Shown in pieces: positions 15,869 to 20,400 of a stretch of DNA of 64,000 nucleotides; position 1 is the stretch's first letter; each line of letters opens with the position of its first letter. A model generated the notes under the pieces. It had not been told where the DNA came from, did not search any database, and worked only from the letters and a program-made list of their open reading frames with translations. Source of the stretch: Oikopleura dioica (lineage: Eukaryota > Animalia > Chordata); the NCBI GenBank assembly GCA_907165135.1, contig OU015568.1, positions 7,812,001 to 7,876,000 of the forward strand, written 5' to 3'. The translations under genes were made by a program, and so were the position numbers.

Positions 15869-15949
15869 ACTGATCATTACTGCTTGATATGGATATTTAT
15901 AAACTATTTCAAAATGCATGTTTGTTAAATTTTTTCGCTTTTCAGATTG

Positions 15950-16468
15950 ATGGACCACGACGAGGACGACAATCGGGACCGACCAGGGAACATCAACAAA
16001 CGCATCGACTTCTCGAAAGAAGTGCGCTGCCTCCTCTACGGCTTCGGCGACGACCCCAATCCTTACACTGAAACTGTCAGTAAGTACACAACACGTAGGG
16101 TTCTAGCCTGTAGAGAGCAAGTAAATAATTTGCGAGTATTGCAACTGAATCCTCGAATCTTCGATCTTCGTGGAGTCTTCAATTATGCATGAATTTATAT
16201 CTGATCGCTCATTCAGATCTCGTTGAGGAGCTTGTCATACAGTACATACAGGACATTACACGCTCGGCGATCGAGTTTGGCAAGTCGGGAAAGATCAACC
16301 TCGAAGCTCTTGCTTACGTCATCAGAAACGACAAGAGAAAAGGTCTGCTAAATGACATTTACAGATTCCTTATTTCAGTTTCTAGCAACTCGAGCGAAGG
16401 AACTAATCTATCTCGACCAAGAAATCAAAAAGGCGCGAAAAGGCTTCGACGACAATGGCCACATGTAA
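15950..16468 (+). CDS. TAF13: TFIID subunit 13
   Basis: FSKEVRCLLYGFGDDPNPYTETVNLVEELVIQYI...IRNDKRKATRAKELIYLDQEIKKARKGFD aligns colinearly with the TAF13 histone fold; last intron 16343-16385. Confidence 0.95.
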
Positions 16469-17062
16469 CCTGTTTCGCCTCCTGATAATCATTTTTCTGT
16501 ACATTTCTCCTGCTCTGTCAACTTCTTTCCATATCGTCGGAGAAGGACTACATCGCCAGCTGAATATAACGCTCTCTGAAGAGCGACGCGGTTCTAATGC
16601 TCTTCTTTCTTGGCAAATTACGCCGGATTTTTACGTTGATGTTTACGAATTGCAGAGGAAGAAGTTTCAATTTAGGGTCGACGATGGGGAGAGCAAATTT
16701 ATCGACATAGGTACTGCTAATGCATTTTATTCAACAAACGAACGATCCTTTTTTCAGAAATTCCCGCTCACCAGGCGGGTTTCCACTCTTTCTCGTGCAA
16801 CCTGGCTGCCAATTCTGTTCTCCTTCCCTTTCACATTCGCTACCAGCCCGCTGGCCCGCACTCAAGCAGCGAGATTCTCATCCCCTCGCCAGAAGTCAAC
16901 TTTATCCAGCCAAACGGCGAAATCGAAACCGAATACGGAGATCCGTTCTACTTGACCATCCCCGTCGCCAATACGAAGCACCTCTTTCTCGTCAATTTTT
17001 CCACTCTCTTTGCAGCTGTTTTCGGCGCTTTGTACCTTGCCCGTGAAATTCTCAGAAAGTGA
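16455..17062 (+). CDS. PIGX: PIG-X/PBN1 (GPI mannosyltransferase I subunit)
   Basis: Signal peptide MATCNLFRLLIIIFLYISPALS, GEGLHR, FYVDVYEL, IDIEIPA, LPFHIRYQP, LTIPVAN and a C-terminal TM helix. Confidence 0.88.
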
Positions 17063-17463
17063 AACTTCTTTCCTACATTCTTAAAACTCAACAACTGTGA
17101 AATTTTATTAAAAATGATCTCCGAACTGGCAAATTATTTTTAATCGTTGAAACTTTCAAATTGAAGTCCTTTCAAGAGTAAAAGCCACTTGCGGCTTTCG
17201 GCTAACAAAAAGCTTCTTCGCCCGTTGAGTTGAGAAAAGCCGCACGCGGCTTTCAAAAATCTGCGACTAACGCTGCCCTCAAAATCTAGAAAAAGCGAAG
17301 TCTTTTCAGATAAGCGAACCTCATTTTTCGAGAATTCAAAATAAGCAAAAATACTTTCGAGTCTGATAAACTTAGCCTCCGCTAATAGCAAATGGATAGA
17401 AAAATGTTTCTTTTTTCAACGAAAGAAGCTGTTCCAGAGATAATAAAAAGTCCGCCAATTCAG

Positions 17464-20400
17464 ATGGCAAATGGGGCGATCGAAAGTCGTTTGATTTCAT
17501 CCCTCCACAACCCAAGGAGTTCCAAAAATGGGCACTCCTCCGATCTTGACCTCCACCAAAAGCTGAAAATCCAACAGAAGCAGAACTCGCTACCAACAGT
17601 CAAGTTCACGCCGCCGACACTAGAAATCGCCACCGACATTGAACAGTTGAAATCGAAATACATTGTTTTAACCCCAAAGGAATGTGGTTCCAAATTGATA
17701 TTTGGCGCTTTTCCTATTTTCGCGATTGGCCGCGGAGGAATCTCCTCGGGCTACAATTGGCCAGTTTGAATTTGAAATGTTATGGCTTCCCCCGTGATGT
17801 AATCATGGAATGGAAAATTAAATAGTGAAAGTGTTAGTCGAACTTTTAATATTCAAAAATGAAGGAAAGTTTTTAGGATCTTAAATTATTTTACTCAAAA
17901 AGTTTGGTTAGAATAGCCGCGCGCGGCTTAAGAATCATAAAATAGGGCATTAAATGCGGCTAAAATGACCGTAGAACTGATTTTATTGGCCTCACGAGCC
18001 GAACGCGGCTTTTCTTCAAACCTAGTGTTTTTGAAATTCTAAAAACTTGAATCTTAGTTTTTCAAAAAGCGTCATTTTTGGAACCACCACCAAAAGAAGC
18101 AATTTAACCCCTCCCCTCACAACAAGTTCCAAGCGAAGCCACAGCCAGTTCCAAAATCTCCCTCAAACGATAGTCAAACTGTAAAACAATCAATATCGGA
18201 ATCTCCTCAGCCCAAGAAAGCTCAAGACGGCATCCCAGGTTGGCCGCGAAATTCGTTGCATCGATTTTATTGATAAATGCTATTCAGAGGCAAAGCGCAA
18301 CTTCTTTCCGGTTGACAACATCGGTTTGAAATGGAACCCGAATCAAGTCAAGCTCCTCGGTGGATTGTACAACTTAGGCAACACCTGCTATCTCAACTCC
18401 AGTTTGCAGTGTTTGATGCACACTGCGCCCCTAGTTAATATTCTCTCTGTTCCGCAGAATCATCCTGCTGTTAGAAATCATGGTAAGAAAATCATTTATA
18501 TCTATTCAAACGGGCTCAGCAACCTGTGTAGAGAGCTGCGAAGCGGTTTCGCCAAAAGTACAATACTTAAAAATTTATTTGCAAAATCGTTAAAAATTTC
18601 AATATTTCCTCGTTCAGGAGCATTTTGCCCGATGAGATCTCTCGCCAAGCTCATCCGCCAGCTCCAAAACCTCGGTCCTCGACAAGCAACAAGGCCGCAC
18701 GAGATTGTACAACATCTGAAACAGATCGCTTCTCATTTCAGCCACGGACGGCAAGAATGCGCCCACGAATTCACGAGACTGTTTATGGACGCGCTTTTGA
18801 GAAGTTGTACTCGTCAGTTTGGAAAGGTTCGTGTTCAAGTCTTTGATTTTTCTTTCACTTTCGGCTTTTTAGGTCGACAAATACGAGGAGACGACGTCGA
18901 TACCACATCGCGTTTTCGGCGGCTGGCTTCGTTCAAGAGTCACGTGTTCAAATTGCAAGAATCATTCCGATACCTTCGAGTCGTTTCTCGATGTTAATTT
19001 GGAAATGAAGGTTGTTATCGCTCCCGTCGCCTATAATCTAACCGCATTTCTAGGGCTGCGATTCGCTATTCGACTGTCTTCGGCACTTCACAATGACGGA
19101 AATTCTCGACAACGGGAATATGTACAAATGCGATAAATGCAAAAAAGCTACGCGGGCTGCAAAGGTAAGGAAAGTCCTTCAAGTCTTCTTTCTAGCCTTT
19201 TTTCTAGCGATTTACCATTCATCGCCCTCCAAATGTTCTGGCAATCTCTCTGAAACGATTCAACATCATGGGAAACAAGAACGGTCGGGAGATTCGCTTC
19301 CCATCGAAGCTTGACATTTCAAAATTCTGCTCCTATTCGAAAATGGACAACAATTACGAGCTGTATGCGATTCTGGTCCACGCTGGATTCACTGTCAATT
19401 CCGGCCATTACTACAGTTACTGTAGAACGGCGAAGGGAAACTGGAGCAGGTACTATTGATGAAATTGAGTCGACCTAATTAAACTTGTTTTAATTAGATT
19501 TGATGACTCTTGCGTCACACCTACGAGTTTGGAAAACGTCCTGCGCCAGCAGCCGTACATGCTTTACTACGTGCGCACTGATACGCCATTTTGGTGTAAA
19601 AAGACAAAGAGACCAAACAGCTCTCCAGTCCAGTCTCCTCTTCCGGCAAAGATCCCGGCCTCGAGTCCGACGACGCCGACGAACAATCAACTGCCGAAGA
19701 ATCCCTTCGTCAGTACTCCTTCACCATCGCCACAGAAACAAAAGTCGTTTATTGGACCAACCAGGCCAGTTGTAACGACCGTCAAAGTGACAAAGCCCGA
19801 TGAGAGAAAATACGAAAAACAATCGCCTAAATCCTCACCAAAGCCTAAGCCAAGAGAGTCGCCAAAACAGTCGCCGAAAATGTCGCCAGTTTCGTCGCCG
19901 CAGCAGCCGATTAGAAACAAACTCTTTTACAAGTAACTACTAGCTCGCCTTATGTCTACTATTCATGTTCTTTTTCTAGCCCTGGAAACAAATCAAACAA
20001 CCAACAGGCGAAGAACGGATCTTCTGCTCCTTCGCCGAAGCACAACAACAATCAATTCCAGCGTTCGAACTCGATAAGTTCAACAATTGGAATGCTCAAG
20101 AGTCAAAAGCCAGAGAAAAAGACGGAGAAAGAACGCATCTCCGGCCTTGTTGGATATTCGAGCGATGAGTCAGACGATGATACGAGTAAAGCCAAGAGCA
20201 GTTTCAATAACAGCAATTCGAACGGTCCAAAGAAGGAGGCAAGAAAGTCGGATGATAAGGATGGCTTGATGAAGAGCTTTCATGAACGAAAAGACAGAAT
20301 CGAAGAAAACAGAAAGAGAAAATATAATTTAGGAAACGGGGGCTCATTCTGGGGCCTCGGAAAGGTAACTCGTTGCTTTCCACTTGATATTAATCCAAGC

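What the first reader, a model, noticed from the sequence alone, without database searches (positions are those of the whole stretch)
16343..16468. PIGX starts inside the last exon of TAF13: same-strand CDS overlap and a probable dual-use splice acceptor
Seen: TAF13 ends GAC AAT GGC CAC ATG TAA (16468). The PIGX ATG at 16455 lies in another frame, a 14-nt overlap, and encodes a credible signal peptide. There is no other in-frame ATG before the conserved GEGLHR motif and no intergenic space for a separate acceptor. The last TAF13 intron ends in tandem acceptors (CAG 16376-16378, TAG 16383-16385), and 16455 is the first ATG after either. Inference: the same 3' splice region is cis-spliced to make TAF13 mRNA and SL trans-spliced to make PIGX mRNA, making the two mRNAs mutually exclusive products of one precursor. 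Re-initiation on a bicistronic mRNA is the alternative. Known: shared-acceptor operons exist in nematodes; mammalian PIGX has an atypical non-AUG start.
Basis: partly seen in the sequence, partly recalled or inferred. Interest (0 to 1): 0.72.

Follow-up and report, generated by a model that had tools for sequence, protein, structure and literature searches.

The report
One mRNA, two genes: TAF13 and PIGX
In the tiny marine chordate Oikopleura the genes TAF13 and PIGX overlap by 14 bases and seem to be carried on one mature mRNA; TAF13 has lost every internal AUG, so ribosomes that skip its weak start can scan on to PIGX.

Summary
TAF13 ends at TAA 16466-68. The only usable PIGX ATG is at 16455, in another frame, giving a 14-nt same-strand overlap.

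It proposed that the last TAF13 intron acceptor is also an SL trans-splice site, giving mutually exclusive mRNAs.
- 27 spliced transcript contigs from separate public runs, covering at least 9 appendicularian lineages, all carry TAF13 and PIGX together.
- Where the 5' end is complete, the 40-nt spliced leader is joined just upstream of the TAF13 AUG. It is never joined to exon 3 or to PIGX.
- One contig runs from SL to poly(A).
- 300-nt RNA reads of a sister lineage cross the spliced exon 2/3 junction and continue 148-223 nt into PIGX. The same reads show SL junctions clearly at the next gene.

Between the two AUGs there is 1 ATG in 3,193 nt, against about 47 expected. TAF13 has lost all internal Met codons. 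Its AUG always has a pyrimidine at -3, and the PIGX AUG always has a purine there.

Best reading: a conserved, unresolved dicistronic SL-mRNA on which PIGX is translated by leaky scanning.

The scan reached the same reading earlier on other DNA of this genome (AROS-DUS4L, s1-400284). There are no transcript data from the window's own lineage, and translation was not tested.

The parts
15931..15945 (+). Pyrimidine tract and AG of the SL trans-splice acceptor that starts the dicistronic mRNA. The mRNA body begins at 15946 (ATTG, then the AUG).
   Evidence: Contigs L003, L004, L011-L015, L020 and L025 read SL...TCTAACAG|ATTGATGG. Pyrimidine fraction 0.87.
15950..16079 (+). TAF13 exon 1. The AUG at 15950 is in the context uugAUGG, with a pyrimidine at -3. 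No other ATG in the exon.
   Evidence: Pfam PF02269; ATG count.
16080..16216 (+). TAF13 intron 1 (GT..AG, 137 nt). It holds 2 ATGs.
   Evidence: The spliced contigs lack it.
16217..16342 (+). TAF13 exon 2, with no ATG in any frame.
   Evidence: Pfam PF02269 at 32 bits. It aligns to human TAF13, where human Met residues are Ile here. ATG count.
16343..16385 (+). TAF13 intron 2 (43 nt, GT..TAG). An out-of-frame CAG lies at 16376-78, and the intron holds 1 ATG.
   Evidence: Read joints 16342 to exon 3 in the sister lineage.
16386..16468 (+). TAF13 exon 3, ending at TAA 16466-68. Its only ATG is the PIGX start.
16455..16468 (+). The 14-nt overlap of the PIGX start with the TAF13 end (ATGGCCACATGTAA).
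   Evidence: The same 14-nt overlap is present in L002/L008, L004, L009 and L024, and a 17-nt overlap in L003.
16455..16710 (+). PIGX exon 1. The AUG context is acaAUGG (purine at -3). It encodes the signal peptide and the GEGLHR motif.
   Evidence: Pfam PF08320; homologues P0001-P0008.
16711..16757 (+). PIGX intron (47 nt). The equivalent intron is retained in some contigs of other lineages.
   Evidence: Retained in L004 and in P0008.
16758..17062 (+). PIGX exon 2, with the C-terminal membrane anchor and stop TGA 17060-62.
   Evidence: Pfam PF08320 at 31.5 bits, above the cut-off.
17107..17112 (+). ATTAAA, the first poly(A) signal hexamer after the TAF13 stop. It is the likely 3'-end signal of the dicistronic mRNA.
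   Evidence: no AATAAA or ATTAAA between 16469 and 17106. 3'-tag reads of run X4 lie on 16859-17041 and not on TAF13.

Best explanation
TAF13 and PIGX are two cistrons of one mature mRNA. The primary transcript belongs to an SL-resolved operon. The spliced leader is added at the acceptor ending at 15945, four bases upstream of the TAF13 AUG. All three introns are removed and the RNA is polyadenylated after PIGX. No processing takes place between the two reading frames (shown by transcripts of related lineages, inferred for this one). Because nothing has to be cut there, the spacer has been free to shrink to zero and below, which explains the overlap.

PIGX is translated by leaky scanning (inferred). 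Some 43S complexes pass the TAF13 AUG, which has a pyrimidine at -3. They meet no other AUG for about 325 nt, because the TAF13 ORF has been cleared of ATG in all three frames, including every internal Met codon. They then initiate at the PIGX AUG, which has a purine at -3. The ratio of the two proteins would be set by the strength of the first start codon.
For: One mRNA:
- 27 spliced contigs from separate runs all join TAF13 to PIGX.
- L004, L006, L007 and L012 carry the template-switch tag plus the full 40-nt SL directly upstream of TAF13.
- L031 runs from SL through both ORFs to AATAAA and a poly(A) tail.
- 300-nt reads of runs X7-X9 cross the spliced exon 2/3 joint and continue a median 148-223 nt beyond 16459 into PIGX.
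- No SL-PIGX junction is seen, while SL junctions make up 40-65% of reads at the next gene (17463) in the same runs.
- There is no poly(A) hexamer between the TAF13 stop and 17107. 3'-tag reads (X4) lie on the PIGX 3' end and not on TAF13.

Leaky scanning:
- In 9 lineages that share 60-94% nucleotide identity, there is 1 ATG in 3,193 nt between the two AUGs, against 66 in the 4,500 nt downstream. About 47 were expected; binomial P = 1e-14.
- The window and the genomic loci L001, L008, L009 and L010 show the same, while the short TAF13 introns do contain ATGs.
- Appendicularian TAF13 proteins have no internal Met upstream of the PIGX start codon. Human and other animal TAF13 have 4-5 at conserved positions.
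- AUG1 has U or C at -3 in all 9 lineages, and AUG2 has A or G at -3 in all 9.
- The SL itself has no AUG.
- Stop-to-start spacing ranges from -17 to +59 nt, so tight stop-start coupling is not conserved, whereas the AUG-free tract is.
- The same set of features defines the experimentally tested leaky-scanning bicistrons of green algae (PMC11892635).
Against: - There is no RNA from the window's own lineage. The reads and contigs come from relatives with 74-78% amino-acid identity in PIGX exon 1 and about 90% nucleotide identity in TAF13.
- Assemblers can clip a short SL branch, so contigs alone cannot exclude a minor SL-PIGX mRNA.
- In X7-X9, depth rises 3-6 fold between exon 2 and exon 3, and many reads start about 18-20 nt before 16415. 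This may be an alignment artefact of divergence, but it could also reflect extra 5' ends there.
- From loose-end lengths I can only bound SL-exon 3 reads at roughly 7-20% or less.
- A pyrimidine at -3 also occurs at ordinary SL-adjacent starts (cagAUGG at 17464). The TAF13 AUG has G at +4, so 'weak context' is not established for this organism.
- Per-lineage shuffle tests are modest (P 0.006-0.33), and the lineages are not independent.
- There is no ribosome-profiling or reporter evidence.
Confidence: 0.62

Rival explanations
1. Dual-use acceptor. The TAF13 intron-2 acceptor (TAG 16383-85 or CAG 16376-78) is cis-spliced to make TAF13 mRNA, or SL trans-spliced to make a monocistronic PIGX mRNA with a 69-nt leader. 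The two products would exclude each other.
For: This is the only strong pyrimidine-rich acceptor upstream of the PIGX ATG (Y = 0.80), and 16455 is the first ATG after it. Depth rises 3-6 fold at exon 3 in X7-X9. Operons without intercistronic DNA and with mutually exclusive processing are proposed for Ciona and for C. elegans SL1-type operons (PMC1488885).
Against: None of the 27 contigs has SL joined to exon 3. Loose ends before 16415 have a median of 18-20 letters and show exon 3 sequence. In contrast, SL junctions at 17463 in the same runs give 47-57-letter loose ends. The model does not explain why TAF13 exons 1-2 are ATG-free in all lineages. It gives TAF13 no 3' end, since there is no poly(A) signal. 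The tandem CAG is not conserved.
Confidence: 0.12
2. Termination-reinitiation on the same dicistronic mRNA. Ribosomes that finish TAF13 at the stop codon stay on the mRNA, move a few bases back or forward, and restart at the PIGX AUG.
For: The dicistronic mRNA itself. The stop and start lie within -17 to +14 nt in 9 of 11 lineages, including an AUGA overlap in L007.
Against: ORF 1 is 112-124 codons long, far above the length after which eukaryotic ribosomes usually reinitiate (general knowledge). No TURBS-like element was looked for or seen. The spacing reaches +28 and +59 nt in L031 and L030. This model does not need, and so does not explain, the conserved removal of all AUGs and Met codons from TAF13.
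Confidence: 0.18
3. PIGX has its own promoter or an internal 5' end inside TAF13, or is trans-spliced at one of the AGs inside exon 3 (16394, 16399, 16421, 16432, 16442).
For: There is an excess of read starts about 18-20 nt before 16415 and a depth step in X7-X9. The verified SL acceptor at 17463 has only 0.53 pyrimidines, so a weak tract does not exclude an acceptor.
Against: No SL letters appear in any loose-end consensus at these places. No contig starts there with SL. The exon 3 AGs arise from conserved Lys/Arg codons and have 0.20-0.60 pyrimidines upstream. The AUG-free exons 1-2 stay unexplained.
Confidence: 0.05

Closest known systems
Leaky-scanning bicistronic nuclear mRNAs of green algae (Chlamydomonas, Auxenochlorella; PMC7896298, PMC11892635)
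   Same: Both have two conserved protein-coding ORFs on one mature capped, polyadenylated mRNA. Both have a short ORF 1, depletion of AUG upstream of ORF 2, a weaker start context at ORF 1, and short or negative inter-ORF distances.
   Different: This case is in a chordate and sits inside an SL trans-spliced operon, so the 5' end is a spliced leader. AUG removal here is essentially complete and is kept across lineages only 60-78% identical. Translation has not been tested here.
SL-resolved operons of Oikopleura dioica (Ganot 2004 as cited in PMC1488885; Denoeud 2010 as cited in PMC4122922 and PMC7986045)
   Same: Same organism group and same 40-nt SL. TAF13 is itself a downstream operon gene that receives SL 58 nt after the stop of the gene before it.
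   Different: Described operons have intercistronic spacers of 23-30 nt, with a 60-nt cut-off, and are resolved into monocistronic mRNAs. Here there is no spacer and no sign of resolution between TAF13 and PIGX.
Operons without intercistronic DNA in Ciona and SL1-type operons of C. elegans (PMC1488885)
   Same: Zero intercistronic distance, and the idea that processing of the two cistrons competes on one precursor.
   Different: In those operons the downstream mRNA carries SL at an AG that abuts the upstream poly(A) site, the coding regions do not overlap, and dicistronic RNAs are rare precursors. Here the dicistronic form is the form found, and no SL junction at PIGX is seen.
AROS-DUS4L pair in the same genome
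   Same: Reported as an 8-nt overlap, one mature two-gene mRNA, and an upstream ORF without internal AUG.
   Different: It concerns other genes at another locus. I did not examine it.

Membership tests
Leaky-scanning bicistronic mRNA | Both ORFs lie on one mature, 5'-complete, polyadenylated, fully spliced mRNA | tested here: met
   L031 runs SL-TAF13-PIGX-AATAAA-poly(A). L004, L006, L007 and L012 carry the template-switch tag plus the full SL. Reads span exon 2, exon 3 and PIGX. All of this is shown in related lineages, not in the window's own.
Leaky-scanning bicistronic mRNA | Depletion of AUG in all frames between the first AUG and the ORF 2 AUG | tested here: met
   1 ATG in 3,193 nt against about 47 expected, across 9 lineages. 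Zero in the window's exons, while its introns hold 3.
Leaky-scanning bicistronic mRNA | Weaker initiation context at AUG 1 than at AUG 2 | tested here: inconclusive
   The -3 position is a pyrimidine at AUG 1 and a purine at AUG 2 in 9 of 9 lineages. However, AUG 1 has G at +4, the species' own consensus was not derived, and cagAUGG also occurs at an ordinary SL-adjacent start.
Leaky-scanning bicistronic mRNA | ORF 2 output changes inversely with AUG 1 strength | not testable with these tools
   Needs reporters or ribosome profiling.
SL-resolved operon junction with a shared or abutting acceptor (Ciona / C. elegans SL1-type) | The downstream mRNA carries SL at an acceptor at the 3' end of, or within, the upstream gene | tested here: not met
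   No SL-exon 3 or SL-PIGX junction in 27 contigs or in reads that show SL at 17463. The bound is roughly 7-20% of reads or less.
SL-resolved operon junction with a shared or abutting acceptor (Ciona / C. elegans SL1-type) | The upstream mRNA is cleaved and polyadenylated at or near that acceptor | tested here: not met
   No poly(A) hexamer from 16469 to 17106. Spliced TAF13 reads run on 148-223 nt, and there are no 3'-tag reads on TAF13.
Termination-reinitiation coupling | Stop and restart codons overlap or lie within a few nucleotides, conserved | tested here: inconclusive
   -17 to +14 nt in most lineages, but +28 and +59 in L031 and L030.
Termination-reinitiation coupling | A short ORF 1, or a dedicated tethering element (TURBS-like) upstream of the stop | not tested
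   ORF 1 is 112-124 codons long, so it is not short. No search for an 18S-complementary motif was made.
TAF13 (Pfam PF02269, TFIID 18 kDa) | Histone-fold domain match over the whole protein | tested here: met
   The three exons hit profile positions 2-25, 27-70 and 73-93. L002 TAF13 against human TAF13 in the PDB gives E = 2e-30.
PIG-X / PBN1 (Pfam PF08320) | Domain match with an N-terminal signal peptide and a C-terminal membrane anchor | tested here: met
   Exon 2 scores 31.5 bits (cut-off 23) and exon 1 17.3 bits. The spliced orthologues P0003, P0004, P0005 and P0007 carry PF08320. UniRef names CBY10358.1 as PIGX.

The most novel reading that the evidence does not exclude
Appendicularians hold a class of obligately dicistronic mRNAs nested inside SL-resolved operons. 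In these, the upstream ORF has been purged of every AUG, so that one capped, SL-bearing mRNA feeds two unrelated proteins by leaky scanning. TAF13-PIGX would be an ancient example, kept across lineages with saturated synonymous divergence, and AROS-DUS4L a second. This would be a third way, beside promoters and trans-splicing, in which a chordate genome expresses tightly packed genes. It would also mean that current operon and gene annotations miss such pairs, for example the reference PIGX model that starts at Met13.
Probability: 0.45. Interest if true: 0.8.

Novelty: new variant of a known kind. Interest (0 to 1): 0.7.

Why it matters
Oikopleura is the textbook chordate for operons that trans-splicing resolves into single-gene mRNAs. 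A conserved pair that is not resolved would show that true polycistronic translation also operates in a chordate, and that selection can reshape a conserved transcription factor to allow it. Here that reshaping means TAF13 has lost all its internal methionines and all out-of-frame AUGs. The finding has three consequences:
- It gives a simple sequence signature for finding further cases genome-wide: an AUG-free upstream ORF, a zero or negative spacer, and no SL site.
- It explains an annotation error in the reference genome.
- It offers a natural system for studying how start-codon strength sets the ratio of two proteins from one mRNA.

Tried and rejected
- The single reads call used runs carrying the same species label. 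They turned out to be a lineage about 10% divergent from the window. Alignment was therefore patchy and no start or end pile-ups could be placed.
- The 30-letter limit on loose-end consensus hides whatever lies upstream of the 29 diverged bases of exon 3. I could only bound SL-exon 3 reads by their lengths.
It was not spent on an 'SL + gap + GACGACAATG' pattern, so that direct pattern search was not done.
- Ganot et al. 2004 (PMC507004) is not held. The intercistronic figures are taken second-hand from PMC1488885.
- Paper searches for Oikopleura with leaky scanning, bicistronic or dicistronic found no description of this pair.
- Other long ATG-free stretches in the window did not look like upstream cistrons. 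A 394-nt stretch in the window's own PIGX 3' half is not conserved in other lineages.
- The window's exons were never joined for a search tool. Pfam and PDB searches were run exon by exon or on natural spliced contigs.
- No fold prediction was run, because both proteins are identified by sequence.

Full report
**What is in the window**

The sequence and the ORF list give two compact gene models on the + strand.

TAF13:
- Exon 1 is 15950-16079.
- Intron 1 is GT16080..AG16216.
- Exon 2 is 16217-16342.
- Intron 2 is 16343-16385 (43 nt).
- Exon 3 is 16386-16468, ending GAC AAT GGC CAC ATG TAA.

PIGX:
- The ATG is at 16455 and exon 1 runs to 16710.
- The intron is 16711-16757.
- Exon 2 is 16758-17062.

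Exon-by-exon Pfam scans hit PF02269 (TFIID 18 kDa) for the three TAF13 exons, at consecutive profile positions. They hit PF08320 (PIG-X) for both PIGX exons.

The overlap 16455-16468 is 14 nt, in different frames. The PIGX frame is closed by TAA at 16404-06. There is no ATG from 16379 to 16454, and no second in-frame ATG before GEGLHR.

One statement needs softening. Exon 3 contains five AG dinucleotides upstream of the ATG, so an internal acceptor cannot be excluded by sequence alone. This matters because the verified SL acceptor of the next gene (17463) has only a modest pyrimidine tract.

**Transcripts**

A word search with PIGX exon 1, cluster listing and contig look-ups gave 27 spliced transcript contigs, each from a different public run or metatranscriptome. 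They also gave genomic contigs: L001 from these look-ups, and L008-L010 from a metagenome scan.

Every transcript contig carries TAF13 immediately followed by, or overlapping, PIGX. Where the 5' end is complete, the contig begins with the spliced leader. In L004, L006, L007 and L012 the whole 40-nt SL is present, preceded by a template-switch tag. The SL is joined a few bases upstream of the TAF13 AUG (SL|ATTGATGG). No contig has SL joined to exon 3 or to PIGX. L031 runs from SL through both ORFs to AATAAA and a poly(A) tail in 1,010 nt.

Assemblers can clip a short SL branch, so contigs alone are not decisive. The raw reads add to them. Runs X7-X9 are oligo-dT RNA-seq with reads up to 300 nt, from a lineage matching L008. 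Their reads cross the spliced exon 2/exon 3 joint and continue a median 148-223 nt beyond 16459 into PIGX sequence.

The same runs show the SL clearly at the next gene: 9-16 reads per run at 17461-63, with loose ends of 47-57 letters. At exon 3, by contrast, the loose ends are short (median 18-20 letters) and read as exon 3 sequence.

[quoted passage not shown] In the window there is no AATAAA or ATTAAA between the TAF13 stop and ATTAAA at 17107. TAF13 therefore seems to have no 3' end of its own.

**The AUG-free tract**

In the window, the only ATGs in the three TAF13 exons are the TAF13 start and the PIGX start. The 180 nt of TAF13 introns hold three. The same holds in the genomic loci L001, L008, L009 and L010.

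The comparison across nine non-redundant spliced lineages, which share 60-94% nucleotide identity in this region, is as follows:

| Region | Length | ATGs |
|---|---|---|
| Between the two AUGs | 3,193 nt | 1 |
| The 500 nt after each PIGX AUG | 4,500 nt | 66 |

About 47 ATGs were expected in the first region (binomial P about 1e-14). The lineages are related, so this overstates independence.

The single exception is in L007. It is out of frame, in a poor context, and opens a 9-codon ORF. Per-lineage shuffles are individually modest: dinucleotide P 0.006-0.13 and synonymous-codon P 0.02-0.33. About 1-2% of 325-nt windows in this 64-kb window are ATG-free by chance. The weight therefore lies in the conservation.

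All appendicularian TAF13 proteins found lack internal Met upstream of the PIGX start codon. Human TAF13 and two other animal TAF13s have Met at 4-5 conserved positions, which are Leu or Ile here. The SL has no AUG.

The TAF13 AUG has U or C at -3 in all nine lineages, and the PIGX AUG has A or G at -3 in all nine. Stop-to-start spacing varies: -17, -14 (five lineages including the window), -4, +9, +13, +14, +28 and +59 nt.

**Reading**

The simplest account is a conserved, unresolved dicistronic SL-mRNA. Because no cleavage, polyadenylation or trans-splicing has to happen between the cistrons, the spacer is free to vanish, which explains the overlap.

PIGX would be reached by leaky scanning past the TAF13 AUG. 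This is the only model that explains why exons 1 and 2 of TAF13, far upstream of any candidate acceptor, have been kept free of AUG. The same combination of features defines the green-algal bicistrons for which leaky scanning was shown by mutagenesis (PMC11892635): a short ORF 1, AUG depletion before ORF 2, a weaker first start, and short or negative spacers.

I put the existence of the dicistronic mature mRNA at about 0.85. I put leaky scanning as the main route to PIGX at about 0.6-0.65.

**Rivals**

It has no junction evidence, gives TAF13 no 3' end, and does not explain the AUG-free exons 1-2. Probability about 0.12.
- *Termination-reinitiation.* It fits the usually tight stop-start spacing. 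However, it does not fit the +28 and +59 cases or the 112-124-codon ORF 1, and it does not need AUG depletion. Probability about 0.18.
- *An internal 5' end, or an AG inside exon 3.* Probability about 0.05.

**What speaks against my reading**

- No RNA from the window's own lineage was examined.
- In X7-X9, depth rises 3-6 fold from exon 2 to exon 3, and many reads start about 18-20 nt before 16415. I cannot tell whether this is an artefact of laying diverged reads on this window or a sign of extra 5' ends. From loose-end lengths, SL-exon 3 reads are at most about 7% (X7) to 20% (X8, X9).
- A pyrimidine at -3 is also found at ordinary SL-adjacent starts, and the TAF13 AUG has G at +4.
- Translation was not measured.

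**Comparison with what is known**

Oikopleura operons are described as resolved by the single SL, with spacers of 23-30 nt and a 60-nt prediction cut-off (PMC1488885, PMC7986045, PMC4122922). Ciona and C. elegans SL1-type operons lack spacers, but the downstream mRNA still receives SL, and dicistronic RNAs are rare precursors.

Full-text searches found no paper linking Oikopleura with leaky scanning or with mature dicistronic mRNAs.

The reference annotation CBY10358.1 starts PIGX at Met13 (172 aa), which hides the overlap. The window's PIGX has no such second Met.

An earlier follow-up of this scan reached the same reading for AROS-DUS4L elsewhere in this genome (s1-400284). I found that note after forming my reading and did not test it. 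If it holds, this is a class and not a single oddity.

**Limits kept**

The window's exons were never joined for any search tool. Searches used single exons by reference, or natural spliced contigs.

Noticed in passing
window 15885-15949: The gene upstream ends at TGA 15885-87. 58 nt later, the acceptor ending at 15945 receives the SL for TAF13. This is an ordinary SL-resolved operon junction directly next to the unresolved TAF13-PIGX pair. The upstream gene was not identified.
   Followed up: partly
window 17449-17466: The next gene downstream is SL trans-spliced at the AG 17462-63, and its AUG (17464) directly follows the SL. Reads of X7-X9 and X4 show ...GATTGTCTAA + cag|ATGGCA. The pyrimidine tract is weak (0.53). 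A second, minor loose end at 17459 suggests unspliced or alternative forms.
   Followed up: partly
L008 2888-2931; L009 1700-1740: TAF13 intron 2 has a GC donor (AAAAG|GCATGA, AAAAG|GCAAGA) in the Bergen-like lineages, but GT in the window and in L010. The donor type has been replaced at a conserved intron position.
   Followed up: no
L004 611-688; P0008: The PIGX intron is retained in some otherwise fully processed SL-TAF13-PIGX contigs. Retention breaks the PIGX frame. This could be noise or regulation.
   Followed up: no
P0009 = CBY10358.1 (reference O. dioica annotation): The reference PIGX model is 172 aa and starts at the second Met. It thereby loses 12 residues of the signal peptide and hides the overlap with TAF13.
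   Followed up: partly
window 16395-16459 (reads of X7-X9): There is an excess of read starts about 18-20 nt upstream of 16415, and a 3-6 fold depth step between TAF13 exon 2 and exon 3. No SL letters are visible in the consensus. This is unexplained.
   Followed up: partly
window 16720-17114: A 394-nt ATG-free stretch covers the 3' half of PIGX in this lineage only. Other lineages have several ATGs there, so it is probably chance.
   Followed up: yes
L006 49-56; L002 1-14; L022 1-12: In some lineages the SL, or an AG-ending sequence, sits 8 nt further upstream of the usual TAF13 acceptor (SL|TGTTACAG ATTGATGG). This suggests tandem alternative SL acceptors in front of TAF13.
   Followed up: no
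P0038, P0039: These database proteins begin MGTHPIFESDFDCLT. That is the translation of the template-switch tag plus the spliced leader, so it is an artefactual N-terminus in public protein sets.
   Followed up: no
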